Positions 6,321-21,059 of a DNA stretch of 23,059 bases are shown one piece after another. The notes below the pieces were generated by a model, which was not told the origin of the DNA, searched no databases, and saw only the letters and a list, made by a program, of their open reading frames with translations. Each line of letters opens with the position of its first letter. The first letter of the stretch is position 1. The DNA is from Macrostomum lignano (taxonomy: Eukaryota). The stretch covers positions 1 to 23,059 of the forward strand of contig NIVC01005186.1 of assembly GCA_002269645.1 (NCBI GenBank), in the 5' to 3' direction. The translations under genes and the position numbers were made by a program.

Positions 6321-6776
6321 AGTCGGCCGCTGTTGTATGTACCTTCAGATTCAGGCGACGGTATGGGGGTCATCACACTGTCCCATTTCATTGCAGCTAG
6401 TCGTCTCAGCCAAGAACCGGAAGATATTGACGATGAGGCGGACTCCATTCTACCGCTTCCGAAATGGCTCAGAATGCTTAGAGCAGCTCTGGATTGGTTT
6501 TGGAACCAATGGAAGACGTCCTACTTGGAGTCTCTGCGCGAGAAAGCCCTAAAGGATCAACCTAACCACCGCCTACCAAATGTTGGTGAAGTAGTTCTTC
6601 TGGCAGGTGAAGCTCAACAACCAAGACTCAAGTGGAAATTGGGTATTGTCGAGGAAGTTCGTCCTGGCCGTGATGGTGCTATCCGGTCGGTTCTTTGCGT
6701 TGCGGGTGCTGGGAGTTCTTGGGAACGGGTGAGACAGCCAGTCCAGTCGTTAATTCCTTTAGAGGTTCAATCCTAA
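6321..6776 (+). pseudogene. BEL/Pao polyprotein C-terminal fragment (DUF5641-like)
   Basis: Motifs above, in the frame of ORF 6333-6776; 5' part of the polyprotein is missing. Confidence 0.85.
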
Positions 6777-7384: not shown

Positions 7385-8946
7385 GGGATTAAGACAGACA
7401 TACTTAAAAATTGTCCAATAATTTATGATACTGCCCAAGTTATTACAATCTTTTTGCATCTTTCCACTGATGGCTGTAGCTTGTACTCTAATTCTCCCTC
7501 TTCTTTGTGGCCTGTTCAAGCTCAAATTTTAAATCTTCCACATTTTTGCATTTTCAGCCAGAAAACTTCTTAATTTTTTCTCTCTTTCTTGGTGCAAAGA
7601 AGCCTAACTGGAAAACATTTCTAGAAGACCATCTGGCTTCAGTTTTTGAAAAAAACATTCTGTTTTACTATTCGAAACAGGCCTATGCATTTTCGTGTTA
7701 AACTCTTTTCGGCTACTTTTGATCTTCCTGCCTTGGCTAGCATACTAAACCATAAGCAATTTAATGGCGAGTTTGGTTGCCTTTACTGTGAAAATCCCAG
7801 TAGTACTGTTAAAGTCGGCCATGGATCCGCACGCAAGTATTCTGAGCCTCATTTATCTACTCCAGTTTCGAATGCTGTTTATTTATCACGAGTTCAACTA
7901 GTCTGTCTCTCTGGTGAGAAGAGCCTTTTTGGTATTAAGGGTGATTCTGTTCTTAGGAAGTATGTGCGCATTCCAAAGAATATTTTGCTTGATTCATTGC
8001 ACTTTCTTTATGAAAATTGTTGTGGCACTCTAATGAAATATATGTTTGATGGTTCCTACCAACAACTGAGTTGCTACCTTGGGCAAAGTCTGCCCTTCTT
8101 TAATGATACTCTTAAAAGAGTCAGCGTGCCTAAGTCAGTAACAGTACCATTTTGTCTAGAGCTTCGCTCTTCGTGGAAAGCCAAGGATTACATGTTCGCT
8201 GCAATGTATCTATTGCCTATATTTGCTTTCCATTGCTTCAGTAGGAAAAATCAGGCATGCGCCATTGCTTTGCTTTCTTTTTCTCTTGTTTGTCATGTAG
8301 CAAATTCTGTAGACTGTGAGCACTACTTGGCGCTTCTCAATAAAGTAATTCAACACTTTATGTCAACTTTAGGAACTGCATTTGATGCCAATGTATACAC
8401 AATTAATTTTCATCTCCTGTGTCATTTGCCGAACAGCTTCTCAATTTTGGTCCTCTAACAGGATACTCTATGTTCTCATTTGAGAGTCAATTTTCAACGG
8501 TAAAGAATTATATTCAAAGGAATCGATTCCATATCAAGCAAATATGCGAAAAGCTCATTCTGCAAAAATGTTGCACTTTCTGTCTTAAGGAGGGAGCTGC
8601 TGCTCAATCTAACAGCTGCATTTTTGAGCTGCTCACTTCTAAGTTTAGAATTTTATCAAGCAGTCCTTCCGCCTGCTGGCGATTTCTATCCACTTATGCA
8701 ATAGTGCAAAACAATCGTCTCTTTTATGCTACTTCTTATCCGAAATTGCCCCCTACTCGGTCATGTATTGTGCAGTTGAAAGATGGTTGTTTCTGCAAAG
8801 TAGTTTGTTTTCTGAATGGCACCGATATTTTAGCTGATGTAATTTTTTTAGACATCTGCAATTTACAAGACTTTTTAGGTAAAGTGGCTCGCTTGATGAA
8901 GAGTAGATAAATAAAGGTAATATCAACATGAAGTATTATTTGAGTT

Positions 8947-8989
8947 GCCGATGCATTTCGTCCATTTGCATTAGGACATCGTCAGGGTC
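8947..8989 (-). ncRNA. Minimal type I hammerhead ribozyme motif (left arm copy)
   Basis: Minus strand reads GACC-CUGACGA-U-GUCC-UAAUGCAAAU-GGAC-GAAA-UGCA-UC-GGC; predicted cleavage between 8950 and 8949; stem I is weak. Confidence 0.65.
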
Positions 8990-9242
8990 TTTTTATTGAG
9001 AAACAATTTGAAGAATATTCAGTATATATAGATAGTTGAGAGTAACAAGAGTAGTTGAATTGAGTTTTTAATTGATGGTTTAAAACTTGTACATAGTAAT
9101 CAATTTTTGATACAGTATTGGTTGGGTAAAGTGCATATCAGTTTCAAGCCAGTCCGGTCATTGACAAATCAGCTAAAAAATTCTGAGTTGACGGCTAGCC
9201 CCACCCATCGCAAGTTGGTTGTTTAACGTGGGCTGTTTGGTC

Positions 9243-9300
9243 TTAATGTACATGTTTAATGTACATCTTTAATGTACATTAGTTAATGTACATCTTTAAT
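9243..9300. repeat. Four TTAATGTACAT copies at 13-14-bp period, plus a partial fifth
   Basis: Copies start at 9243, 9256, 9269 and 9283; partial at 9296. Confidence 0.9.
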
Positions 9301-9620
9301 GATAAAGGCTATTGATTTTTGTAATAGAGATCACATGCTCTGCCTATTAGAAGCCCTGTACATTAAGACCAAACAGCCCACGTTAAATAACCAACTTGCG
9401 ATGGGTGGGGCTAGCCGTCAACTCAGAATTTTTTAGCTGATTTGTCAATGACCGGACTGGCTTGAAACTGATATGCACTTTACCCAACCAATACTGTATC
9501 AAAAATTGATTACTATGTACAAGTTTTAAACCATCAATTAAAAACTCAATTCAACTACTCTTGTTACTCTCAACTATCTATATATACTGAATATTCGTTC
9601 AAATTGTTTCTCAATAAAAA

Positions 9621-9663
9621 GACCCTGACGATGTCCTAATGCAAATGGACGAAATGCATCGGC
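9621..9663 (+). ncRNA. Minimal type I hammerhead ribozyme motif (right arm copy)
   Basis: CUGACGA 9625-9631, extra U 9632, stem II GUCC 9633-9636 / GGAC 9647-9650, GAAA 9651-9654, palindromic AUGCAU stem III, triplet AUC ending at 9660. Confidence 0.65.
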
Positions 9664-10410
9664 GGCTCAAATGGTGCTTCATGTTGATATTTACCTTTAT
9701 TTATCTACAAGACTTTTTGAATCTGTCCAATGTACCTATTGCTGCTGATATATTATGTTTAGCAAAGACTTTCTTGTTTATCTGCTGCCCGTCTTCTAAC
9801 ACCTGCACTATTCCAGTGGGATGTAATTTTCTGCATCAGTGTGTTTCAGTCAATAATATTTTTCCCGATAAGGACTTGTGTCTTGTTATACTAGATTCTT
9901 GCCACCATGAATATAGCTTAATTTGGGATGACTTAAAAGCTGAGTAGGAACTGTTAAAACTGAGTAAGCACTACTAAGAATTGTATCTGTCGCGGATCAT
10001 TTTCAAAATATAGATCACTTGAACCAATTGCCATACAATAATTTGCTTATTGCTTGCTAGTTGTGTATCTTGTTTGATTTTTTGTTGACTGTTGTATAGT
10101 TAGAAAAAGGTAAAAATACAAGAAAACATTTTATATGTACTCAAATTTCAATTTTAATGACTTTTAACGTTTCACTTTCTATGCAGCTTTAATTTGAGTG
10201 TTATATAAATATAATAATGGAATGCAATTGTGCATATTGTACTAATTGTACATTATAAAATGCCCTGAATAGTAATCGATTCTGGTTAGAAAAAAATCCT
10301 CTCATGTGTTTATCGTCTTCCTTACATTAATTTTCTAATCTAAAAATTCAGAACATTGGCAAAAGCCATACATGCTACTCAGAGTAAACTGTGTGTCTAT
10401 CCACCAAAAG

Positions 10411-10633
10411 TAATTGCAATTGGATTACGCCAGAAATTGCATAAATTATAATTCAATTGGTCTAAATTGCAACACTTACAATCTGCATGTGCAAAATTGC
10501 TAAAATTGCAATTTTGATTGTAATCAGCTTATTCAAAATTGCAATTGACGTGCACACAATTGGCAATTATTGTACAATTTCGGCAAGTAGATTGCAATTT
10601 TCAACAATTTCTTGTAATTTTGGTTGACTAGGG
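10411..10633. repeat. Right subterminal AATTGCAAT repeats and TIR of the EnSpm-like element
   Basis: Roughly ten ATTG(C/T)AAT-type motifs preceding GGTTGACTAGGG. Confidence 0.7.
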
Positions 10634-10776: not shown

Positions 10777-11602
10777 CAAGCTGTTGAAACCCGCAGATTT
10801 TGAACCCGGGGAATTCCAATCCCCGGAACTACTTTTGCATGTATTCTAAATCTAAGGTCATGCACAAACAAAAACTTGTTAATAGTTAGTAGGAAAGAGG
10901 TAGACATAAAATGGACACATTCGTGTAAAATTAGGATTTGAAGCAAAAATTGATATTGTTGGCTGGGGTACTTCACAGAATGTCAGGCAATGTCTGTCTG
11001 ACTCTAAAACATGTATTGCTAAACTTTGGTCTCTCCCTGACTCTCCCTATGTCCCTTGGATCCTTTAAAATTTCTATCGTCTCTTCTGTTTCCTCTCTTC
11101 TCTCTCGTCCCTCGTCTCTCCTCTCTCTTCTCTCCTCTCTCCTCTCTTCTCTCATATCTTCCCTCATCTCTCTTCTCTTTCATCTCTCTTATCTCTTGTC
11201 TCTTCTCTCTACTCTCCTCTCTCTCTCTTCTCTACTTTTCGTTTCTCTCTTCTCTCCTCTCTCCTGTCTCCTCTCTACTTTTCGTTTTCTCTCTCCTCTC
11301 TCCTCTCTACTTTTTCGTTTTCTCTCTTCTACTCTCTCCCCCTCTTCTCTCGTCTCTTCCTTCTCCTCTCTATTCTTTTCTCTCTTCTCTTAACTCTCTC
11401 CTCTCTTCTCTCACCTCTTTCCTCTCTCTCTTTCCTCTCATCTCTTTTCTTGTTTTATCTCTTCTCTCTCCCCTCGTCACTCGTCTCTTCCCTCACCTCT
11501 CTTCTCTCTTGTCTGCGTTTTTATCTCTCCTTTCTCTTCTTTTATCTTTTCTCTCTTATCTCTTCTCGTTTCTCTCTGCTCTGCGCTCTCTCTCTCTCTC
11601 TG

Positions 11603-11667
<65 letters not shown>

Positions 11668-13714
11668 TCTCCTCTCCCATCTCTCTTCTCCTCTCTACTC
11701 TCTCCCCTCTTCATTCTCCTATTTCCTCTTCTCTCTCCCTGTCTCTCCTCTCTCCTCTAGTCTATGTAATCTCTTCTCTCTTATCTCTCCTCTGTTCTCT
11801 CTACTCTCCCATCTCTCGTCTGTTCACCCTCATCTCTGCTCTCTCATCTGTCATCTTTACTCTCTAATACGTTCTCTCACTTATCTCCTCTGTAATCTTC
11901 TCTTTCACCTCTTCTGACTCCTCTCTTTCCTTACTCCTCTCTTCTTTTCTCTTCCCTCTTCTATACTCTCTCTCTCCTCTATTATCTTCTCTCATCTCTC
12001 TGCACTCTCCTCTCACCTTTTTCATCTCTCATCTTTACTCTCTCATCTCTCCTTTCATTTGTCTCATCTCTACAATCTCATCTCTCCTTTCTCCCCTCTT
12101 CTTACACCCCTCTCTTATCTCTATCTCTTCTCTTCTCACTCCTCTCTCCCCCTCTTATCTCCTCTCTTCTCTATCCTTTCTACTCTCTCCTCTCCTCTTG
12201 ACCCTCTGTCATCTTCTTTCTGCTCTCTCATCTCTACTCTCTTCTCACTCTTCTTTACTCTCCTCTCATTGATCCTCTGTCTCATCTCTCCCCTCTTCTC
12301 ACCTTTACTCTTTTCTCACCTTTACTCTTTCCTCTCCCTCCTTTCTCCCCTCCTCTCGCTTCTTCCTCCCTTCTTTTCTGCTCTCTCCTCACCACTTGTC
12401 TCTCCTCTTATCTTCCATGTTTTCTCTAATCCCCCTCTCGCCTCTCCTCTCTTCTAATAGTCTATTCCTTCTCCTTTCCACTCTCATCTGGCCCGCACAT
12501 GAGCTGGATTCTTTATCTGGCTTTTGAAGTAAAAGTCTGCCAATCACTGCTTCGAAAGCCAGTTTGTGGGACGTACTACTCTCATCGTTATTCACATGCT
12601 TTGATCACGTCATCTTTCTTGCCAATTTGCAGCCCTGAAAGGAATTTGTGTAATCTTCAGCTCCACTGCAGTCTGGACTCTGGATCAGTCTAACAACCAA
12701 GGAAATACGCATTTCTTAGGAGGCCATTTAAAATTTACACACTACCTTTAAAAGAAACCTAAAATTTCCATGGTGTGGCTAATTTAGTAGGGTTGTATTG
12801 CACTGCATTGCCTTTTCATAAATCTTTCGCTTTTACAAACCATGCTGGATTCCCTCGATTTGCCAATTGCCATCCACTGTTAAACTGCTGCAGAGTTTGC
12901 CAATACAGAGGGGAGGGCAGTGGTTAGAATTTCTCACTAAACTGTTATGGCTAAACGTAGCCTCTCCACTCTCGGGGTGCGAGAAGGCTATAAATAAAGT
13001 TATTCCAAAACACTCTACATTTGCTATGTACATTCAGTCCTATTGCCTGACCCTTCGTCTGGCTCTGGGGGGAATGAGTGGAGTGAGTGAGTGGCACAAA
13101 CAACAGAAAAAGCAGACAAACTTCACATGCTTACAGTTTCTTTTTCGGTTGAGTTACAGAGTTGAAACTTTACATTTAGACAGAGAATGGGTCAATGAAG
13201 AATTGTGTCAAGTTTGAAGTCAATCGTTTTACGTGGAGCAAACTTAGGGCAGCTGAAAGTTAGTCAATTTTGAAACCCTTTTACACATCTGGGCCCAGAT
13301 CGGGAAAGAGAGGCAGGCAGGCGGAGGTTGGGGTGGCTGTCTCGCTGAAAAAAACAGCCTAACTTTAAAAGTGCACAGCGCCGTTCAGGATTAACTTTGA
13401 GATTTAAAATTTTACACGATTGTGTCAAAATAGTTAAAAATTGCCTGTGTCAAATTTGAAGAGAATCGGTAGAAGTGGAGTGGCGCTATGGAGGATTTAG
13501 TAAAAAAATCGCGCATTTTGAGCAGTTTTTTGTACTTTTAGGTAGGAAGACTTGAGTCTAGGAAATTTAAAGGTAGCCTAAGACATTCTCCGTAGTAAGT
13601 TTAGGGTGGGTATAAAATTTGGTGTCATTTGGTTGAGCGGTTTGGGAGTCCATAGCGATCAAAATTGTCCACACACAGACACACACACAGAGTTTTGATT
13701 TTTATATGTAGAGA
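10777..13714 (-). mobile_element. Putative non-autonomous Helitron-like element (about 2.9 kb)
   Basis: On the minus strand it begins A|TCTCTACATATA next to a (GT)-type microsatellite (13670-13690) and ends CTTG|T with a GC-rich hairpin CCGGGGA/TCCCCGG (10806-10826) upstream; A|T target with no TSD; AAATTT...AATCG-type modules at 13204, 13446 and 13611. The end is CTTG rather than canonical CTRR. Confidence 0.5.
11071..12488. repeat. Degenerate CT-rich (homopyrimidine-biased) tract of about 1.4 kb with a perfect (TC)27 core at 11611-11664
   Basis: Directly visible; the plus strand is nearly devoid of purines. Confidence 0.95.
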
Positions 13715-14802
13715 TTAAAAAAAGACTAATATATAAACTAGTTTTATAAACTGTATAGTACATATAACTATGGTCTAATTATATTTGACCACAAATCTAC
13801 ATGTATCTTTTTAAAAGCAAATAAGTTGCATTGTTGTTTGTTTCTTTTAAAACACCCTTTTGTATTCTGCATCATAAATAGTATGCAAGTACAAAGCTAA
13901 TAAAAAATGCTAAGCTATCAACACATAAAATCAAGCCTAAACTCTATTTACCAACTTTAGAAGTTTAGTTAGTTAAAATTCATTATGAAAATATAAGATA
14001 CAGGGAAAATATTGAGTAGTCCCTGATAGGATAATTATTTAAAAGGTATTTTTTCAGTTACTGTGTAAATAACACTGGCAATATTTACATGGTAGGCCCT
14101 ACTGTGCAAATAAATAACAACTGCTATTATAAATACCATTACCACTGTCCTTAATATTAAAATAAATGGTTTACTTGGATTGCTTTGCTAAAGTCAAAAT
14201 ATCAAAGAGAAGTCAAAGAGAAATAGCAATAGCTTAGAGTAAAGCATTTTATTATTAGATTTCAAATTGTAAGATATTGAATTATACTTAAAAAAATATT
14301 AGACTTATCACTTAGTCTTAGACTGCTGCCTAGCTAACATTAACAACTAATGAAAAAATCTATTTGTTCAGTCCCCAATCAGTTTGTCATTACTCATAAT
14401 CTGCCATTTTGTCATCTTAATAATTTAGCATTTTTACTAACTGAAGACCAGAAGAGCGTCACAAAAGCAGTTTGATCGTGTGTACTCCAGACTCCGGATT
14501 GTATACATGTACGCCGGAAAATTCCGGCGTACAGAGGGACCTAGATTACACATTGGCGTACAACTTGGCGTACAAAGGCGCCTGGCGTGCCCTCTTGGCG
14601 TACGGCTTGGCGTATAGAGATTGCCGAGACCAGCAGGTGGGACCAAAAGTTCCGAGTCCCAACAATCAATCTACATAATTAGCATACAAAAATGATTAAG
14701 TTTGCATTTGGCATAGTTTCCATGTACATAGTTACAGTAAATATACAGTAGCTAAATTTTGATCAGAAAGAATGGCTGGCCCTTTACGAAAAAAACGGAA
14801 AA

Positions 14803-15139
14803 TGTAATAGTGCTCAATTTGCGTGCGCGTGCACTTCTAGTGTTTTCTCCGTATTTCTTTCTGCGTCACCCCACCCCTGCGTATAGCCTTTTCTAGAAAT
14901 TTCTTTTTGTTTCTGATTGGCTGAAAACGCGTGAATAACGAGCCCCAACCAATAGAGTGCTTAGTGCCTACCCTATCGGCGAAATCCGATTGGTTAGGAT
15001 TTTCTAAGCTGCGTTTTTCACCCTGCCCTCCCCCATCGCGGTCAGTCTATTTAATCAAGCAAGCTGGAACGCAAATAAATCAAGTTTTTCTCTGACTAAA
15101 GAAGTCCCGGCAGTTAAAACTCAAGAATACGCGGCTACA
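14803..15139 (+). repeat. 5' LTR (337 bp)
   Basis: TGTAATAG...GGCTACA; no differences from 20723-21059 by eye. Confidence 0.97.
14916..15079 (+). promoter_or_regulatory. LTR promoter/polyadenylation signals: three CCAAT boxes, TATA-like TATTTAA, AATAAA
   Basis: ATTGG 14916-14920, CCAAT 14949-14953, ATTGG 14989-14993, TATTTAA 15048-15054, AATAAA 15074-15079. Confidence 0.6.
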
Positions 15140-15140
15140 T

Positions 15141-15155
15141 TGGCGACCACGCCAG
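15141..15155 (+). other. Primer-binding site, probably tRNA-Arg
   Basis: TGGCGACCACGCCAG one base after the LTR; its complement reads as a tRNA 3' end (CTGG-CGTGGTC-G-CCA). tRNA identity is inferred. Confidence 0.75.
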
Positions 15156-15163
15156 TTTTCCAC

Positions 15164-16288
15164 ATGTGGAATAACGACGACTACCTGGAACTACGTGGAC
15201 GTCTCGTCGGACGACGGCGCAACGCAGGCGACGAGGCAGCTTCCGTTTCTACAGAGTCTACGAACGCGTCCAACCCCTTCGTGTCGATGACCACAGTCAG
15301 CGAAGCCACAAATCCCTTCCTCGTTGCCAACGACCTTCAGAGGGCACACTCGGCGGAAGTCTCAACCAACCCGTTCCTTGAAGACATCGACCAAGCGTCA
15401 GGGCAGGCCTCAGCAATGCAGCAGTACGCCTATCCTCCAGCTCACGGATACGCAGCGCTGCCAGACTACAATCCAGTACCGGCTCTTCCGCCAGTACCTA
15501 AGCCTGCACCGTACAACGGTCGGGAGGATTTCGACGACTTTCTCATCAGGATCAGCGCCTATATTAGCCGGTTCCCAGGCCTTCGAGACGCCGACAAGAT
15601 CAACACCCTGACTGCGTTCCTCGGACCGGCTTTTGCAACGTACACCACCTGGCTGGCGATCCAGTGTGCCTACGTCGGACTGCCACCGGGGACAACCCTG
15701 GACCAGCTACCTGGTGTCCGCTATGAGGGCCTCGTTGAACACCTCCGGTCTCGTCACGGCGGGGCCAAGAGTGCAGCGTTACTTCGCCGCGAGTTCCGTG
15801 CTCGGCAGCGTCGACCAGAGGAGAGCTTCGAAACGTACCTGACGGAGCTTCAACGGCTAGCTGCAAGGGCATACCCGGACCCAAGAGCTCAGGCTTACGT
15901 CCAACAGACAGTTAGCGAGCAGTTCATGCATGGTCTCAATGACGGCTACGTCACCGAGCGACTACTGAATCAACCAACACCACCAAGCACTGTGGAGCAG
16001 GTTCTACGAATAGCCCAGCAGCTTCGAGAAACCCGGGCCTACATGGATGCTGGCCGTGGCGAAATCCAGCCCCAGCAACCGAGACCACCACAGAGCCAAC
16101 TTTCAGCGCCACCGAAACCACTAATGCCTCAGCAGCCTGCCTCATCTGGCGGTCGAGGACAGCAACGACAGCAATCACCGGCTAGTTCCAACTGTTTCGG
16201 CTGCGGTCAGCCGGGCCACATCCGACGCAATTGCCCAAACGCCGAGGGGGCTGGTTCACGAGGCCAGCACCGGCCCTCTCAGCACTAA
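15164..16288 (+). CDS. gag: Gag polyprotein with a single CCHC zinc knuckle
   Basis: First ATG at 15164 (the ORF track starts at a TTG overlapping the PBS); PKPAPYNG...F, QRRPEESFETYLTELQRLA capsid-type motifs; CFGCGQPGHIRRNC. Confidence 0.92.
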   Translation: MWNNDDYLELRGRLVGRRRNAGDEAASVSTESTNASNPFVSMTTVSEATNPFLVANDLQRAHSAEVSTNPFLEDIDQASGQASAMQQYAYPPAHGYAALPDYNPVPALPPVPKPAPYNGREDFDDFLIRISAYISRFPGLRDADKINTLTAFLGPAFATYTTWLAIQCAYVGLPPGTTLDQLPGVRYEGLVEHLRSRHGGAKSAALLRREFRARQRRPEESFETYLTELQRLAARAYPDPRAQAYVQQTVSEQFMHGLNDGYVTERLLNQPTPPSTVEQVLRIAQQLRETRAYMDAGRGEIQPQQPRPPQSQLSAPPKPLMPQQPASSGGRGQQRQQSPASSNCFGCGQPGHIRRNCPNAEGAGSRGQHRPSQH

Positions 16289-19200
16289 CGCATTCGGCCT
16301 CAACACCACGCCTCAGCAGCTGCCAGCCTGGCCAGGTGCGCTTCGTCACAGCGCGCATCCTTAGACGACGGCGCCACTGTCTGATCGACACCGGGGCAGA
16401 GGTGTCCTGCATCAGCGATGACATATGTAAGAAAGCTAGGCGGCGGCTGCAGCCCAGCAGCATCATCATAAGAGGCGTGGATGGCAACCTACAGTCTGTG
16501 CTGGGCGAGACTACTTTGGCAGTGACTCTGGGAACCGTACAAGTCCATCATCGTTTCGTCGTACTCGAGAAGCTTCACCCGACGTCCGTCATCCTGGGCT
16601 GTGACTTCCTCAGTGAACACGACGTCTCGGTCCATCTCCAAGCCGGTTGCATCACTTTCAACAGCCTAGGCGTGTCGATTCCAGCTCGAAAAAGTAAAGA
16701 GGCAGCACAGACCTGCAAGCTCGTATCAGCGGCCTCCGTGCAGCTGCAGCCAGGGGAGCGCTGGATAATCCCCGTTAAACCAGCAAAGTCGGCCTCGTGG
16801 ACGCGATCGGAGTGTCCAGGAGTCGTCACCGGCACAAGATCACAGGGGCTCCTGGTGGGTCGTTGTGTTGCCAAGCTGGTCGAGAGAGGCATGGGCCTAG
16901 CAGTCATCAACGTCGACGACCACACGGTCAACATCAGCGACGGCGACATTGTTGGCATCTTTTCCCCGCTAGGAAGTCAGCCATTCGTTCAGCAATCGGG
17001 TGCCGCTGGCAGCACGGCGGCGACGGCCGCTGGCAGCACGGCGGCGACGGCCACTGGCAGCACGGCGGCGACGGCCGCTGGCAGCACGGCGGCGACGGCC
17101 GCTGGCAGCACGGCGGCGACGGCCGCTGGCAGCACGGCGGCGACGGCCACTGGCAGCACGGCGGCGACGGCCACTGGCAGCACGGCGGCGACGGCCGCTG
17201 GCAGCACGGCGGCGACGGCCGCTGGCAGCACGGCGGCGACGGCCGCTGGCAGCACGGCGGCGACGGCCGCTGGCAGCACGGCGGCGACGGCCGCTGGCAG
17301 CACGGCGGCGACGGTCGCGGTCAGCACGGCTACATCAACAACAGCTTTAGCGACGGACTTACCTCGCACCAACTGGCTGAACGACGTGCACATCGAAAGC
17401 TCTATCTCCGTCGAAGAGCAACAGTCGGTCAAGGATTTGCTGTTAGAGTTCAGCACCGTTTTTGCATCCCCTGGCAATGCTGGTCGAACTGCAGTCCTGC
17501 AGCATCGCATCGACACCGGCGGGGCAAGGCCGATCCGGCAGGGTTTGCGGCGTGCAGCGCGTCCAGTCATCGACAAGCAGGCCGAATTGATCGACGACAT
17601 GCTGACCAAAGGAGTAATCCGGCCGTCTTCATCGCCTTGGGCTTCGCCAATCGTGCTTGTTCGTAAGAAGGACGGGACAGCGCGCTTTTGCTTAGACTAT
17701 CGACTGCTCAATGAGGTCACCAAGCCGGACGCTTTTCCAATTCCGAGGATCGACGACACACTCGATGCGCTGCAAGGCAACGCCTACTTCTCGGCACTCG
17801 ATCTGGAGAGTGGCTACTGGCAGGTTGAGGTCGAGGAGCGCGACAAAGAGAAAACTGCTTTCATCTGCCATCAAGGCCTCTTCGAGTTCAACGTCATGCC
17901 GTTTGGTCTGCGCAATGCCCCGGCAACCTTTCAACGCCTCATGCAGCTGGTGCTCCAAGGCCTGACCTGGCAAGCGTGCCTGGTCTTCATCGACGACGTT
18001 ATTGTCATGGGCCGGACTATCGAGGAGCACAACTATCGGCTGCGGGCGGTGTTCGAGCGGCTGCGGGACGCGAACCTACGCTTGAAGCCATCTAAATGCC
18101 ATTTCGCCAACACCACGATGATCGTCTTGGGCCATCGAGTTTCCAAGTCGGGTATCACCGTCGACGAGTCAAAGACTGCTGCGATCCGAGACTGGCCTAC
18201 ACCCCGAACTTCCAAGGAGGTCAAGAGCTTCCTAGGTCTCGCAGCCTACTATAGACGGTTCATTCGGGATTATTCAAAGATCGCCGAGCCGCTACGACGC
18301 CTGACGGTTCCGACAGAAAGGTTTCAGTGGACGTCCAAGGCCCAAGAAGCATTCGACCAACTGAAGGCAACACTGACCTCTGCTCCAATCCTCGCCTTCC
18401 CGGATACTAGTGCGACCAGCTCGGAGTTCATTCTGGACACTGACGCCAGCGACTGCGCCATTGGTGCGGTACTCTCTCAACTGCAGGCGGGCGAAGAACG
18501 AGTCATCGCGTACTCCAGCAGAGCACTAACAAAAGCCGAGCGCAACTACTGTGTAACGAGGCGGGAGCTGCTGTCCGTCGTTGAGCATGTCAGGAAGTTC
18601 CGGAATTACCTGCTGCCTCGGAAGTTCACCGTGCGGGTCGATCATCAGTCTCTAACGCACCTGCTGACATTCAAGGAGCCCGAAGGTCAACTCGCGCGGT
18701 GGCTGCAGACGCTAGACGAGTTCGACTTCAGAGTACTCTATCGGCCGGGCCGTCAACACAACAACGCCGATGCGCTGTCCCGTCAGCAGCAGCGCTGTAC
18801 CAACCAGTGTCGGGTGTGTCGACCAACAAATGAGACCACCAGCAGGACGACATCCTCGGTTGCCTGCCAGACCGACGCCAACAGTGATGCCGCCGCTGCC
18901 GCCCAGATCAACGCAGCGACCATCAAGCTAGTGTCGACGGCTACCGACGAAGCTGTTCAGACCGACAATGTGCATGTCTGCGTCGGCACCGTGCCATCAA
19001 GGCGCAAGCAAATCCATCAGCCCCGGTCGGACGACAGCGAAGAAAGCAGCAGCAGCGAGGACGACACCAACGAAGATGAATCCGCAGCGCCAGCGGCAGA
19101 CAACAGGCCACCGACGCTACGTATGCTTCAGCTGCAGGATCCGGTTATCAGTCCGGTGTTCCGACTGCTGGCCGACGGCAAGACTAGGTTTACCGACCGA

Positions 19201-20466
19201 CAACGCGACCGAGTACCGCCGGAGAGCCTGGTGCTGGCGCAGAAGGTGCATGACTTGTGTTTCGTGAACGGTACACTGCACAGGCTGGTCAACACAAAGC
19301 CAGTACCCGTCATTCCCCGCTGCCGACAACGCGAATTTGTCGACGAGATTCACAACGTCGGCCACCTGGGCGAAGTCAAGACGCTGGCCAGCCTAAAGAC
19401 GCGTTGCTACTGGCCAAAAATGTCGGAGAGCGTCCGGTTGGCCGTTCGGTCATGCCAGGTTTGCCAGCGGGCAAAGACTCCGGTTATCAAGCGGGCGCCG
19501 CTACAGTCCATCACTGCAGGGTTTCCAATGCAGCGTGTCGGGTTCGACATTGTCAAGGTCGGCGCTTCCAGAAACGGCAACGATCGGATCCTGAGCATCG
19601 TCGACTACTTCAGCAAGTGGACGGAGCTGGTGCCGATTCCGGACGAGAAGGCGACGACAATTGCCAAGGCCCTCTTCAACAACTGGATCTCCAGGTGGGG
19701 TGCTCCGCATATTCTCCACTCCGACCGCGGCAAGAGCATCGATGGCCGCATCATTCGCAGTCTCTGTACACTATTGGAGGTCGACAAGACTCGAACGTCG
19801 GGCTATCATCCTCAATGTGACGGCCTCGTGGAGAGATTTCATCGGACACTCCATCAGATGTTGCGCTGCCACCTTCAAACTGTCGATCCGCTGGACTGGG
19901 AGGACGCCCTGCCGTACTGTCTCCTAGCCTATCGAAGCAGCATCAGCGCGACGACCGGATTTTCCCCACATTTCCTGATGACGGGCCGGGAGGTGGTTCT
20001 GCCATTGGACGTTGTCTATCGGTCCCCAGAGCCTCCATCCGTCGTCGGCCAGTACGCAGTAGAGACCATTCAACGACTGCAGGACGCCTTTGACGCTGTG
20101 CGGAGGTCAACTGGCGCGGCTCAACGACGGCAGAAGCGGTACTACGATCTGAAAGCCCAGAAGCGCAAGTTTCGCACCGGCGATCTAGTGTGGCTGTTCG
20201 TTCCGCCTGCTGTGCTGTCCAGGACCAACTGTCTGCCTCCGAAGCATCAATCACCGTGGACAGGCCCATTTAAAGTCATGCGCAAGACATCACCTGTCAA
20301 CTACTTGGTGCGGCCGATCAATTACACGGACGGGGAGATCAAGGGGCGCGTCGTGCATGTCAACAAGTTGAAGCGAGCGTGTCTGCAACGGACCCAGTCT
20401 GCTCAGCGTGCTGATCAGGACGCCAGTAGTGACGATGAAGGGCAACTTGTTGACGCTGAGGACTGA
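16231..20466 (+). CDS. pol: Pol polyprotein (aspartic protease, dUTPase-like remnant, repeat linker, RT, RNase H, integrase with GPF motif); -1 frame relative to gag
   Basis: LIDTGA (D at 16387), ILGCDFL; RT motifs LDYR, LDLESGYWQV, MPFGLRNAPATFQR, FIDD (17986-17997); RNase H DTDAS...NYCVTRREL...DH...ADALSR; integrase HHCC, D-D-E core, WTGPF; no chromodomain; no internal stop codons. Confidence 0.97.
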   Translation: MPKRRGGWFTRPAPALSALTHSASTPRLSSCQPGQVRFVTARILRRRRHCLIDTGAEVSCISDDICKKARRRLQPSSIIIRGVDGNLQSVLGETTLAVTLGTVQVHHRFVVLEKLHPTSVILGCDFLSEHDVSVHLQAGCITFNSLGVSIPARKSKEAAQTCKLVSAASVQLQPGERWIIPVKPAKSASWTRSECPGVVTGTRSQGLLVGRCVAKLVERGMGLAVINVDDHTVNISDGDIVGIFSPLGSQPFVQQSGAAGSTAATAAGSTAATATGSTAATAAGSTAATAAGSTAATAAGSTAATATGSTAATATGSTAATAAGSTAATAAGSTAATAAGSTAATAAGSTAATAAGSTAATVAVSTATSTTALATDLPRTNWLNDVHIESSISVEEQQSVKDLLLEFSTVFASPGNAGRTAVLQHRIDTGGARPIRQGLRRAARPVIDKQAELIDDMLTKGVIRPSSSPWASPIVLVRKKDGTARFCLDYRLLNEVTKPDAFPIPRIDDTLDALQGNAYFSALDLESGYWQVEVEERDKEKTAFICHQGLFEFNVMPFGLRNAPATFQRLMQLVLQGLTWQACLVFIDDVIVMGRTIEEHNYRLRAVFERLRDANLRLKPSKCHFANTTMIVLGHRVSKSGITVDESKTAAIRDWPTPRTSKEVKSFLGLAAYYRRFIRDYSKIAEPLRRLTVPTERFQWTSKAQEAFDQLKATLTSAPILAFPDTSATSSEFILDTDASDCAIGAVLSQLQAGEERVIAYSSRALTKAERNYCVTRRELLSVVEHVRKFRNYLLPRKFTVRVDHQSLTHLLTFKEPEGQLARWLQTLDEFDFRVLYRPGRQHNNADALSRQQQRCTNQCRVCRPTNETTSRTTSSVACQTDANSDAAAAAQINAATIKLVSTATDEAVQTDNVHVCVGTVPSRRKQIHQPRSDDSEESSSSEDDTNEDESAAPAADNRPPTLRMLQLQDPVISPVFRLLADGKTRFTDRQRDRVPPESLVLAQKVHDLCFVNGTLHRLVNTKPVPVIPRCRQREFVDEIHNVGHLGEVKTLASLKTRCYWPKMSESVRLAVRSCQVCQRAKTPVIKRAPLQSITAGFPMQRVGFDIVKVGASRNGNDRILSIVDYFSKWTELVPIPDEKATTIAKALFNNWISRWGAPHILHSDRGKSIDGRIIRSLCTLLEVDKTRTSGYHPQCDGLVERFHRTLHQMLRCHLQTVDPLDWEDALPYCLLAYRSSISATTGFSPHFLMTGREVVLPLDVVYRSPEPPSVVGQYAVETIQRLQDAFDAVRRSTGAAQRRQKRYYDLKAQKRKFRTGDLVWLFVPPAVLSRTNCLPPKHQSPWTGPFKVMRKTSPVNYLVRPINYTDGEIKGRVVHVNKLKRACLQRTQSAQRADQDASSDDEGQLVDAED
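16234..16301 (+). promoter_or_regulatory. Candidate -1 programmed ribosomal frameshift signal (slippery C CCA AAC plus H-type pseudoknot)
   Basis: Heptamer 16234-16240 in correct gag phase; stem 16244-16255/16269-16280; loop GAGGCC 16260-16265 complementary to GGCCTC 16296-16301. Confidence 0.7.
17002..17313 (+). repeat. In-frame minisatellite, 13 x 24 bp (GCC[G/A]CTGGCAGCACGGCGGCGACG), encoding (A[A/T]GSTAAT)13
   Basis: Units every 24 bp from 17002; ACT variant in units 3, 7 and 8, otherwise identical. Confidence 0.97.
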
Positions 20467-20708
20467 CTAACGCACGTTGAGGACTGACTGACTGGTTGTA
20501 GCCAGCAGTTTTGCTTTATAGGTCGTAGGTCTAGAACTTTTTAATAGCGTCTATCTATTAGCTTAGTAATCCTGATTTAGATTTAATTGTTCGAAACCCG
20601 GTTATCTCGAATTGTTCTATTTGCTACAGCTGGTTCTGTTCTTCCCTATTGGAGTAGCTTTCATCTGTCGTTTCCACCCCTTGGGTTTAATGAGGACATT
20701 AAACTGTT

Positions 20709-20718
20709 GAAAGGGGAG
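20709..20718 (+). other. Polypurine tract
   Basis: GAAAGGGGAG four bases upstream of the 3' LTR. Confidence 0.75.
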
Positions 20719-20722
20719 CTTT

Positions 20723-21059
20723 TGTAATAGTGCTCAATTTGCGTGCGCGTGCACTTCTAGTGTTTTCTCCGTATTTCTTTCTGCGTCACCCCACCCCTGC
20801 GTATAGCCTTTTCTAGAAATTTCTTTTTGTTTCTGATTGGCTGAAAACGCGTGAATAACGAGCCCCAACCAATAGAGTGCTTAGTGCCTACCCTATCGGC
20901 GAAATCCGATTGGTTAGGATTTTCTAAGCTGCGTTTTTCACCCTGCCCTCCCCCATCGCGGTCAGTCTATTTAATCAAGCAAGCTGGAACGCAAATAAAT
21001 CAAGTTTTTCTCTGACTAAAGAAGTCCCGGCAGTTAAAACTCAAGAATACGCGGCTACA
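20723..21059 (+). repeat. 3' LTR (337 bp)
   Basis: No differences from the 5' LTR by eye. Confidence 0.97.

What the first reader, a model, noticed from the sequence alone, without database searches (positions are those of the whole stretch)
8947..9663. Pair of hammerhead ribozyme motifs on opposite strands within a 350-bp foldback
Both arms contain CUGACGA-U-GUCC-(10 nt)-GGAC-GAAA-UGCA-UC. This is the full conserved hammerhead core with a 4-bp stem II and a palindromic AUGCAU stem III, the layout of minimal type I hammerheads of Penelope-like elements and retrozymes that cleave as dimers. As I recall it, the core also resembles the schistosome Sm-alpha ribozyme (CUGACGAGUCC...GGACGAAA). Unusual points are an extra U between A9 and G10.1, an AUC triplet and a weak stem I (2 bp plus bulge). 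A transcript from either direction carries one sense ribozyme and its exact antisense, a potential built-in switch. No ORF-based annotation would reveal this.
Basis: partly seen in the sequence, partly recalled or inferred. Interest (0 to 1): 0.85.

Follow-up and report, generated by a model that had tools for sequence, protein, structure and literature searches.

The report
Inverted twin Penelope retroelement ends, hammerhead motifs
The foldback is an 826-bp dead insertion made of two head-to-head, 5'-truncated 3' ends of a Penelope-like retrotransposon in a Macrostomum flatworm genome, each carrying that family's usual minimal hammerhead motif: a real but already well-described arrangement, not a new ribozyme switch.

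Summary
Two ~350-nt inverted arms (8903-9252 / 9357-9708) each carry the same 36-nt hammerhead-like motif (8950-8985 on -, 9625-9660 on +).

The foldback is a discrete 826-bp insertion (8877-9702) with a 10-16 bp target-site duplication. It sits in a Tnp2/DUF4218 transposase gene of Macrostomum lignano or a close relative. A 96-98 % identical paralogous locus has the empty site.

The + strand at 9299-9436 encodes the last 45 aa of a Penelope-like element (PLE) RT/GIY-YIG ORF (E 1.5e-9 to an RT+GIY-YIG protein). The hammerhead starts 189 nt after its stop codon.

In 15 of 27 related PLE loci a minimal hammerhead lies at the same place and on the same strand. These share the "extra" nucleotide after A9, the G10.1-C11.1 pair, a covarying helix II, C3-G8/U3-A8 covariation and a palindromic helix III. 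A covariance model built from them ranks the two window motifs first (17.2 and 15.7 bits).

Head-to-head truncated copies, a 26-32 nt "tail" at one end only, and dual opposite-strand min-HHRs 100-700 bp apart are all published PLE features.

The "sense/antisense switch" idea is not supported. The layout is an integration by-product, and a read-through transcript would bury the ribozyme in a -632 kcal/mol hairpin.

Verdict: new member of a known kind, low interest.

The parts
7646..8876 (+). Host gene, upstream part: a decayed Tnp2/DUF4218 (CACTA/EnSpm-type) transposase ORF interrupted by the insertion.
   Evidence: The reconstructed protein is 93 % identical over 98 % of its length to M. lignano BOX15_Mlig010160g8 (PF02992, PF13960). 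The DNA is 97.8 % identical to L001 10631-12120.
8861..8876 (.). Left copy of the duplicated target, ATTTACAAGACTTTTT. Positions 8867-8876 are unambiguous.
   Evidence: Present once in the empty paralogous site (L001 12105-12120) and twice in the window.
8877..8902 (-). 26-nt 'tail': extra 3' sequence of the minus-sense copy that is absent from the other end. It is 32 nt if counted from the unambiguous end of the right copy.
   Evidence: It lies between the target duplication and the inverted repeat. It matches the optional one-sided 30-40 bp PLE tail described in PMC8557442 and PMC11167929. This part is inferred, since no other family copies were available.
8903..9252 (-). Left, minus-sense, 5'-truncated PLE 3' end. 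It holds the last 26 codons of the ORF (9253-9173) and the 3' UTR.
   Evidence: Inverted-repeat arm. The ORF on - reads MYIKTKQPTLNNQLAMGGASRQLRIF*.
8950..8985 (-). Minimal hammerhead motif of the left copy. Predicted cleavage is between 8950 and 8949.
   Evidence: Exact 36-nt match. Best hit of the independent model R1, at 17.2 bits.
9253..9298 (.). Junction filler between the two inverted copies: stuttered TTAATGTACAT repeats that copy the palindrome-containing inner end of the arms.
   Evidence: Direct-repeat family D1 and the junction sequence. The template-switch origin is inferred.
9299..9436 (+). Last 45 codons plus the stop of the PLE RT/GIY-YIG ORF in the right, plus-sense copy: MIKAIDFCNRDHMLCLLEALYIKTKQPTLNNQLAMGGASRQLRIF*.
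   Evidence: phmmer against 1.84e9 proteins gives P0003 at E 1.5e-9 and 62 % identity, matching that protein's extreme C-terminus, and P0005 at E 1.5e-4. P0003 has RVT_1 + GIY-YIG and P0005 has GIY-YIG. 39 further PLE-type tails share the pattern.
9437..9702 (+). 3' UTR (pLTR part) of the right copy. It ends at 9702-9708 without a tail.
9625..9660 (+). Minimal hammerhead motif of the right copy, starting 189 nt after the stop codon. Predicted cleavage is after C9660.
   Evidence: Exact match. R1 hit at 15.7 bits. Same position and strand as in 15 of 27 related loci.
9703..9718 (.). Right copy of the duplicated target, ATCTACAAGACTTTTT. The first 6 nt are ambiguous, because they also continue the inverted repeat.
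9719..9947 (+). Host transposase ORF, downstream part. It is in frame with the upstream part once the insertion is removed.
   Evidence: The reconstructed empty site reads ...DICNLQDFLNLSNVPIAAD... without interruption. The DNA is 95.6 % identical to L001 12105-13030.

Best explanation
The foldback is one 826-bp retrotransposition product. It consists of two 5'-truncated 3' ends of a Penelope-like element (PLE; an RT followed by a C-terminal GIY-YIG endonuclease) joined head to head. It is inserted in a Tnp2/DUF4218 transposase gene of Macrostomum lignano or a very close relative.

Each copy comprises the last 26-45 codons of the PLE ORF and a ~270-nt 3' UTR (the pLTR part). Each carries the minimal type-I hammerhead that PLEs carry there. 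Both 3' ends point outward.

Most likely mechanism (inferred): the PLE endonuclease made a staggered cut, giving the 10-16 bp duplication. Reverse transcription was then primed from both nicked strands on PLE RNA 3' ends, once at the 'tail-including' start site (left end) and once at the 'tail-less' start site (right end). The two cDNAs were joined in the middle by template switching at a TGTACA palindrome, which left the stuttered filler.

The hammerhead motif has an intact catalytic core. Like other metazoan PLE min-HHRs, it could only become active through an intermolecular or tandem double-hammerhead that extends helix III via AUGCAU. At this locus each strand has only one sense copy, and that copy would be locked in a long hairpin with its antisense. 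The motifs here are therefore best read as inherited passengers of a dead-on-arrival insertion, not as a working device.
For: Shown by tool results:
- Empty site in paralogous locus L001, with the target duplicated in the window and the host ORF restored on removing the insertion.
- The ORF tail at 9299-9436 is homologous to the extreme C-termini of an RT+GIY-YIG protein and of GIY-YIG fragments. It fits the tail pattern of 39 PLE-type endonucleases.
- 15 of 27 related loci carry a min-HHR on the sense strand 81-364 nt past the ORF end. That is 15 hits in 15.6 kb, against 5 in 88 kb of control sequence. Three of those 5 are genuine pLTR or inverted copies.
- The relatives share the extra nucleotide after A9, G10.1-C11.1 (or G-U), a palindromic helix III and NUH. 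They also show C3-G8/U3-A8 covariation (7:7) and double changes in 3 of 4 helix II pairs.
- A covariance model built without the window ranks the two window motifs first and second. Both give full-length alignments with all pairs standard.
- L020 and L023 show an RT ORF between HHR-bearing direct repeats.
- L003 shows the same outward-facing inverted pair.

From the literature:
- PLE min-HHR hallmarks, and dual opposite-strand motifs 100-700 bp apart in Schistosoma (PMC4209133).
- Inverted 5'-truncated copies and a one-sided 30-40 bp tail (PMC8557442).
- A purified PLE protein that cleaves and extends both target strands and starts reverse transcription at two sites delimiting the tail (PMC11167929).

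Folding: the hammerhead fold of the monomer scores -1.7 kcal/mol against an MFE of -10.3. The double hammerhead scores -13.9 against a cofold MFE of -28.7. The whole-element hairpin scores -631.6 kcal/mol, with the motif fully paired.
Against: - No other copy of this exact family could be retrieved, because the Macrostomum genome is not searchable by DNA here. Conservation and covariation are therefore shown for the PLE clade, not for this family. The identity of the 26-nt tail as element sequence is inferred.
- The R1 scores are modest (E 0.2-0.4 over the 46 kb searched, about 0.003 if restricted to the 400-nt 3' UTR).
- Rfam hammerhead models give nothing.
- Helix II is only 4 bp (plus perhaps 2 bp after a bulge), against 5-8 bp in the relatives.
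- Helix I is only 2 bp (plus 2 after a 4-nt bulge).
- The relatives' motifs were picked by a pairing descriptor, so their 100 % pairing is partly circular.
- All 7 arm differences lie in the outer 112 nt (P about 3e-4 under uniformity). The simple twin-priming model does not predict that.
Confidence: 0.85

Rival explanations
1. The inverted duplication arose by snap-back. A single cDNA folded back on itself at the TGTACA palindrome and self-primed, rather than forming from two primings on the two target strands.
For: The inner 240 nt of the arms are 100 % identical. The junction lies at a palindrome with stuttered repeats.
Against: The left end carries 26-32 nt of extra 3' sequence that the right end lacks. 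The outer 110 nt differ at 7 positions. A copy made from its own partner should be identical and no longer than its template. PLE protein is reported to extend both strands (PMC11167929).
Confidence: 0.15
2. The foldback is an exapted hairpin-RNA locus. Read-through from the host transposase gene gives a ~350-bp dsRNA that is diced into small RNAs against this PLE family. The hammerhead plays no part.
For: A near-perfect 350-bp hairpin of -631.6 kcal/mol. It lies inside a + strand ORF that could be transcribed. The clustered A/G differences between arms could reflect dsRNA editing.
Against: No expression or small-RNA data could be consulted. The host gene is itself a decayed transposon copy with a frameshift. 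The structure is fully explained as an integration by-product.
Confidence: 0.12
3. It is a functional ribozyme switch. The sense hammerhead is regulated by its own antisense copy in the same transcript.
For: The catalytic core is intact in both copies, and the two 36-nt motifs are identical.
Against: The whole 350-nt arms are near-identical, so identity of the motif shows no selection. The hairpin outcompetes the hammerhead fold by hundreds of kcal/mol. The min-HHR needs a second sense copy to extend helix III, and none is present on either strand (PMC4209133). The same layout arises routinely in PLE integration (PMC8557442; L003).
Confidence: 0.02
4. The hammerhead-like string is a chance match inside an ordinary repeat.
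For: No Rfam hit. Weak helix I. The hammerhead fold is not the MFE.
Against: The expected chance frequency is about 2e-5 for the arms. The motif sits at the position, on the strand and with the idiosyncratic features seen in 15 related PLE loci. It is the top hit of a model that never saw it.
Confidence: 0.03

Closest known systems
Minimal hammerhead ribozymes (min-HHRs) in the pLTRs of metazoan Penelope-like elements (Cervera & de la Pena 2014, PMC4209133), especially the flatworm Schistosoma mansoni (Cercyon) families and the Drosophila virilis Penelope variant
   Same: The CUGANGA...GAAA core. One unpaired nucleotide between A9 and G10.1. The G10.1-C11.1 pair. A palindromic 15.x-16.x segment (AUGCAU) that implies dimeric action. 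A short helix I (2 bp, as in D. virilis). Location downstream of the RT/GIY-YIG ORF. Occurrence as dual motifs on opposite strands a few hundred bp apart.
   Different: Helix II is 4 bp with a 10-nt loop, rather than 5-8 bp. The host is a macrostomorph flatworm, for which I found no published PLE or HHR description. Activity is untested.
Canonical EN+ PLE insertion architecture (Arkhipova 2006; Craig et al. 2021, PMC8557442; Anolis PAc biochemistry, PMC11167929)
   Same: Strong 5' truncation. An inverted truncated copy abutting another copy. An extension (tail) at only one end. A target-site duplication. RT followed by a C-terminal GIY-YIG.
   Different: Here there is no full-length unit at all. 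Only two short 3' ends (about 376 and 404 nt) are joined head to head. The tail is 26-32 nt, at the low end of the quoted 30-40 bp.
Animal non-LTR retrozymes (Cervera & de la Pena 2020, PMC7229834; 10.64898/2026.07.22.740005)
   Same: Type-I hammerheads with a weak, palindromic helix III, related to PLE pLTRs.
   Different: Retrozymes are tandem direct repeats without coding sequence and give circular RNAs. This element is an inverted pair with a coding remnant and only one sense motif per strand.
Schistosome Sm-alpha canonical type-I hammerhead (Rfam RF00163)
   Same: A flatworm host. The same helix II stem GUCC/GGAC (from memory, not tested here).
   Different: No 6-bp helix I or loop-loop tertiary contacts, an extra nucleotide after A9, and no Rfam match.

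Membership tests
Hammerhead ribozyme (catalytic core) | C3 U4 G5 A6 N7 G8 A9 box | tested here: met
   CUGACGA at 9625-9631 (+) and 8985-8979 (-).
Hammerhead ribozyme (catalytic core) | G12 A13 A14 followed by A15.1, with a U16.1-H17 cleavage triplet (NUH) | tested here: met
   GAA-AUGCAU-C, giving triplet AUC. The relatives use GUU, AUU, UUC, GUC, GUA and CUC.
Hammerhead ribozyme (catalytic core) | Helix II closed by G10.1-C11.1 | tested here: met
   GUCC/GGAC, 4 bp. All pairs are standard in the R1 alignment.
Hammerhead ribozyme (catalytic core) | Helix I formed between the sequence 5' of C3 and the sequence 3' of the cleavage site | tested here: inconclusive
   Only CC/GG (2 bp), plus GA/UC after a 4-nt bulge. 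The relatives have 2-6 bp.
Hammerhead ribozyme (catalytic core) | Match to the curated Rfam hammerhead covariance models | tested here: not met
   No hit at gathering score or at E<=10. The models also miss all 14 related PLE motifs, so the test has no power for this class.
Hammerhead ribozyme (catalytic core) | Site-specific self-cleavage | not testable with these tools
   This needs in-vitro transcription of monomer, tandem-dimer and helix-III-extended constructs.
PLE minimal hammerhead (Cervera & de la Pena 2014) | Unpaired nucleotide between A9 and G10.1 | tested here: met
   U at 9632. Present in 14 of 15 related motifs.
PLE minimal hammerhead (Cervera & de la Pena 2014) | Palindromic 15.2-16.2 segment / loop 3 that allows a double hammerhead | tested here: met
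   AUGCAU. The double-hammerhead structure is pseudoknot-free and scores -13.9 kcal/mol, but it is not the MFE.
PLE minimal hammerhead (Cervera & de la Pena 2014) | Located in the pLTR / 3' UTR of an RT-GIY-YIG element, on the sense strand | tested here: met
   It starts 189 nt after the stop codon of the GIY-YIG tail. The relatives lie 81-364 nt after theirs.
PLE minimal hammerhead (Cervera & de la Pena 2014) | Long helix II (5-8 bp) | tested here: not met
   4 bp, with an optional 2 bp after a 2-nt bulge that is energetically unfavourable (-3.1 vs -5.0 kcal/mol).
PLE minimal hammerhead (Cervera & de la Pena 2014) | Consensus families with compensatory changes within the genome | not tested
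   No other Macrostomum copies were retrievable. Covariation is shown only across the wider clade, in motifs selected by a descriptor.
Penelope-like element insertion | RT followed by a C-terminal GIY-YIG endonuclease ORF | tested here: inconclusive
   Only the last 45 aa (right copy) and 26 aa (left copy) survive the 5' truncation. They are homologous to the C-terminus of an RVT_1+GIY-YIG protein.
Penelope-like element insertion | Discrete insertion with a target-site duplication | tested here: met
   Empty site in L001, with a 16-bp duplication of which 10 bp are unambiguous.
Penelope-like element insertion | Inverted 5'-truncated copy adjacent to another copy, with a 30-40 bp tail at one end only | tested here: met
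   Head-to-head arms with a 26-32 nt extension at the left end only. L003 has the same layout. That the tail is element sequence is inferred.
Animal non-LTR retrozyme | Tandem direct repeats, each with a sense hammerhead, and no coding sequence | tested here: not met
   No direct repeat of the unit exists in the window. The copies are inverted and contain an ORF remnant.
Foldback / MITE DNA transposon | Symmetric terminal inverted repeats that reach the duplication on both sides, and no retroelement content | tested here: not met
   26 nt of non-repeat sequence lie between the left duplication and the arm. The arms encode a PLE ORF tail and 3' UTR.

The most novel reading that the evidence does not exclude
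The palindromic helix III of PLE min-HHRs may serve mainly to dimerise two PLE RNA 3' ends inside a dimeric RT-EN particle, rather than to cleave RNA. The two templates would then be reverse-transcribed at the same time from the two nicked target strands. Head-to-head twin insertions such as this one would be the direct footprint of that mechanism. The supporting features here are two outward-facing 3' ends, one at each of the two known RT start sites, with arm differences confined to the first ~110 nt copied. The 5 clustered G/A differences would then mark template-specific RNA editing or error-prone initiation.
Probability: 0.08. Interest if true: 0.7.

Novelty: new member of a known kind. 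Interest (0 to 1): 0.2.

Why it matters
The finding adds a macrostomorph flatworm example to the known association between Penelope-like retroelements and minimal hammerheads. It is also a clean, dated example, with an empty site available, of the head-to-head 'twin 3' end' insertion type with a one-sided tail. That could help in reading the still poorly understood PLE integration mechanism. It does not reveal a new ribozyme class or a regulatory device. For annotation, it shows that such foldbacks should be masked as PLE fragments. It also shows that Rfam hammerhead models do not detect this class.

Tried and rejected
- Rfam at gathering score over the whole window, and at E<=10 over 8850-9760 and 9590-9690: no hammerhead hit, only spurious miRNA-hairpin matches to the foldback.
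- Word-indexed protein search with the 49-aa ORF tail: no candidates. Pfam on the same peptide: nothing. Only the full HMMER search succeeded.
- Exact-protein look-up of a 39-aa intra-element ORF, intended to fish out other copies: not on record.
- Exact-motif scans of the metagenome and viral contig collections: 0 hits.
- Search for further copies of the element or other hammerhead cores in the masked window and in L001: none beyond chance 12-mers.
- Alignment of the 3' UTRs of the window and L003, to test tail conservation: too divergent to align.
- L002 (the contig encoding P0003) ends 63 nt after the stop, so it gives no information on a hammerhead.
- Literature search for Macrostomum with Penelope or hammerhead: nothing relevant.
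- Readings considered and rejected: MITE/foldback DNA transposon, retrozyme, chance motif and sense/antisense switch. The reasons are given under Rival explanations and Membership tests.

Full report
**1. Observation**

The region contains a long inverted repeat. The arms are 8903-9252 and 9357-9708, separated by 104 nt. A direct alignment of the right arm with the reverse complement of the left arm shows the inner 240 nt identical. There are seven differences, all in the outer ~110 nt: five substitutions and two 1-nt indels.

The 36-nt string CTGACGATGTCCTAATGCAAATGGACGAAATGCATC occurs exactly twice in the window, at 9625-9660 (+) and 8950-8985 (-).
- CUGACGA (C3-A9);
- one extra U;
- GUCC/GGAC helix II around a 10-nt loop;
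- GAA;
- AUGCAU (A15.1...U16.1);
- C17.

The predicted cleavage sites are as stated. A descriptor for core + helix II + palindromic helix III + H17 is expected 0.0015 times per shuffled window. The two motifs are one sequence copied by the inverted repeat, so they count as a single event.

**2. The foldback is a discrete insertion**

The flanking + strand ORFs (7646-8910 and 9639-9947) belong to one gene. The reconstructed protein is 93 % identical over 98 % of its length to Macrostomum lignano BOX15_Mlig010160g8, a Transposase_21/DUF4218 protein. This places the window in M. lignano or a very close relative.

The DNA of that paralogue is L001 (NIVC01000446.1). It aligns to window 7388-8876 and to 9703-10633 with a 16-bp overlap at L001 12105-12120. 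In other words, L001 is an empty site.

The junction alignment shows ATTTACAAGACTTTTT once in L001 and on both sides of the insertion in the window (8861-8876 and 9703-9718). There is one mismatch, ATCTAC on the right. Those six bases also continue the inverted repeat, so the unambiguous duplication is 10 bp.

Removing 8877-9718 restores the host reading frame...DICNLQDFLNLSNVPIAAD.... The insertion is therefore 8877-9702, 826 bp. At the left end, 26 nt (8877-8902) lie between the duplication and the arm and have no counterpart on the right.

**3. What the arms are**

The + strand frame across the loop and inner right arm reads MIKAIDFCNRDHMLCLLEALYIKTKQPTLNNQLAMGGASRQLRIF* (9299-9436). The left arm encodes the last 26 of these residues on the - strand.

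Pfam and the word-indexed search found nothing for this short peptide. A full HMMER scan of 1.84 billion representatives gave two informative hits. A third hit, P0004, is a 1080-aa low-complexity repeat protein with no matched stretch, and I disregard it.
- P0003: E 1.5e-9, 62 % identity, aligned to its extreme C-terminus.
- P0005: E 1.5e-4, also aligned at its C-terminus.

P0003 carries RVT_1 followed by GIY-YIG, and P0005 carries GIY-YIG. This domain order defines canonical EN+ Penelope-like elements.

A profile of these tails retrieved 39 more fragments, all of the form ...SYIGKTKRHL...EAL.IK...P.LNKQL...F*. Each arm is therefore the 3' end of a PLE, made of an ORF tail plus a 3' UTR. Both 3' ends point outward. 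The right copy (~404 nt, 9299-9702) is the longer one. The left copy is 350 nt plus the 26-nt extension.

**4. Is the hammerhead a real family feature?**

I fetched 26 metagenomic loci encoding related tails, plus L003, and scanned them with a relaxed min-HHR descriptor.

Fifteen of the 27 loci have a hit on the sense strand 81-364 nt past the ORF end. That is 15 hits in 15.6 kb. The controls gave 3 sense-upstream hits in 36 kb and 2 antisense hits in 52 kb. Three of those five control hits are themselves genuine:
- the upstream pLTR copies in L020 and L023, which are direct repeats 2975 and 2762 nt apart flanking RVT_1 ORFs;
- an inverted copy in L003.

- an unpaired nucleotide after A9 (14 of 15);
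- G10.1 paired with C11.1 (G-U in 2);
- helix III palindromes (ATCGCGAT, ACATATGT, ACATGT, ATATAT, AACGTT, AGCT, ACGT, ACGCGT, AGATCT) followed by H;
- a short helix I (2-6 bp).

On the alignment of 14 of them (A5), C3-G8 alternates with U3-A8 (7:7). Three of the four outer helix II pairs show changes on both sides, with 100 % pairing. The pairing was demanded by the descriptor, so the independent evidence is the positional and strand enrichment.

A covariance model built from A5 without the window was run over the window with filters off. It ranks 8940-8993 (-) first at 17.2 bits and 9617-9670 (+) second at 15.7 bits. Both are full-length alignments with all pairs standard, and the next hit scores 12.2 bits. 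The E-values are modest (0.19 and 0.4 for 46 kb). For the ~400-nt 3' UTR, where the motif is expected a priori, that corresponds to about 0.003.

Rfam's hammerhead models detect none of the 14 relatives either. The Rfam negative for the window therefore reflects model scope, not absence.

**5. Comparison with the literature**

Cervera & de la Pena 2014 (PMC4209133) defined these min-HHRs in PLE pLTRs. [quoted passage not shown] They describe a 2-bp helix I in D. virilis. [quoted passage not shown] They also report no monomer cleavage and only weak dimer cleavage in vitro.

Craig et al. [quoted passage not shown]

The Anolis PAc study (PMC11167929) shows three things. The purified protein cleaves and extends both target strands. 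Reverse transcription starts at two internal sites that delimit the tail. Hammerhead cleavage is not needed in vitro.

The window element matches this picture point by point, apart from a shorter helix II (4 bp) and a slightly short tail (26-32 nt).

**6. Mechanism**

Shown by tool results:
- a discrete insertion with a target duplication;
- two outward-facing PLE 3' ends;
- a one-sided extension;
- an intact hammerhead core at the family position.

Inferred:
- a staggered cut by the PLE endonuclease;
- priming on both strands, using the tail-including start site on the left and the tail-less site on the right;
- joining of the two cDNAs at the TGTACA-containing sequence, where the 46-nt filler (9253-9298) consists of stuttered TTAATGTACAT repeats.

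A snap-back origin is less likely, because the left end is longer than the right and the ends differ.

**7. Function of the motif at this locus**

The monomer does not favour the hammerhead fold: -1.7 kcal/mol against an MFE of -10.3. The AUGCAU-mediated double hammerhead is sterically consistent and scores -13.9 kcal/mol, but it is less stable than the alternatives (two monomers -20.6, cofold MFE -28.7).

A transcript across the whole element forms a -631.6 kcal/mol hairpin in which every hammerhead nucleotide is paired with its antisense. Each strand has only one sense copy, so the tandem arrangement needed for a double hammerhead is absent.

The 'built-in switch' is therefore not supported. 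The most a transcript of this locus would plausibly do is yield long dsRNA.

**8. Verdict**

The assignment as a PLE-type minimal hammerhead is supported, and now rests on an ORF-tail homology and on comparative data. The unusual features are family hallmarks, and the opposite-strand pairing is an integration by-product that has already been described. This is a new member of a known kind, apparently the first noted for Macrostomum in the searchable literature. Interest is low. The main limitation is that no other copies of this exact family could be examined.

Noticed in passing
window 9664, 9665, 9673, 9674, 9676 (right arm) vs 8946, 8945, 8937, 8936, 8934 (left arm): All five substitutions between the arms are G (right copy) versus A (left copy) on the sense strand. 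They cluster within 13 nt just 3' of the predicted cleavage site, while the inner 240 nt are identical. This looks like local hypermutation or editing (A-to-I on RNA, or G-to-A on cDNA) or error-prone RT initiation. The direction is unknown without other copies.
   Followed up: partly
window 9639-9702 (+) and the equivalent on the left arm (-): An ATG inside hammerhead loop 2, 22 nt before the cut site, opens a frame that stays open to the 3' end of the right copy. By accident it then runs on into the host ORF, giving the 102-aa ORF 9639-9947. In the left copy the same frame is closed by TGG->TAA, which is one of the clustered G/A differences. In Anolis PAc the PLE ORF is reported to start at stem II, 26 bp before the cut site (PMC11167929). 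This family's ORF may therefore also begin inside the hammerhead.
   Followed up: partly
window 14803-21022: An apparently intact, young Ty3/gypsy LTR retrotransposon. It has 300-nt LTRs that are 100 % identical (14803-15102 / 20723-21022), a gag ORF at 15140-16288 and a 1411-aa pol ORF at 16231-20466 (PR-RT-RNaseH-IN). Its GC content is 57-65 %, against ~35 % in the surrounding genome.
   Followed up: partly
window 16930-17402: A tandem array with a 24-nt period (about 14+ units) inside the gypsy pol reading frame, which would give an 8-aa repeat in the polyprotein.
   Followed up: no
window 10938-12457: A strongly strand-skewed (GC skew -0.8, AT skew -0.75), CT-rich low-complexity tract that produces long spurious 'SLSLSL' ORFs. 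Part of the following stretch (11654-13715) matches L001 in inverted orientation at 84 % identity.
   Followed up: no
window 10420-10610: A cluster of short direct and inverted repeats of AAATTGCAA(T), downstream of the Tnp2/DUF4218 transposase ORF. These may be subterminal transposase-binding repeats of the host CACTA/EnSpm-like transposon.
   Followed up: no
window 6333-6776: An ORF fragment with a DUF5641 domain (E 2.4e-14), typical of the integrase C-terminus of BEL/Pao retrotransposons. It is another nested transposon remnant.
   Followed up: no
L023 333-5283 and L020 19-3079: Metagenomic contigs carrying complete or tandem PLE units. Both use U3-A8 variant hammerheads in direct pLTRs 2.76-2.98 kb apart. 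They would make useful reference examples for a PLE min-HHR covariance model, which Rfam lacks.
   Followed up: partly
L007 1-179: A perfect 86-nt inverted repeat with a 7-nt loop, upstream of a related PLE ORF tail. Rfam scores it as a spurious miRNA hairpin (mir-3136, 49.6 bits, below gathering).
   Followed up: no
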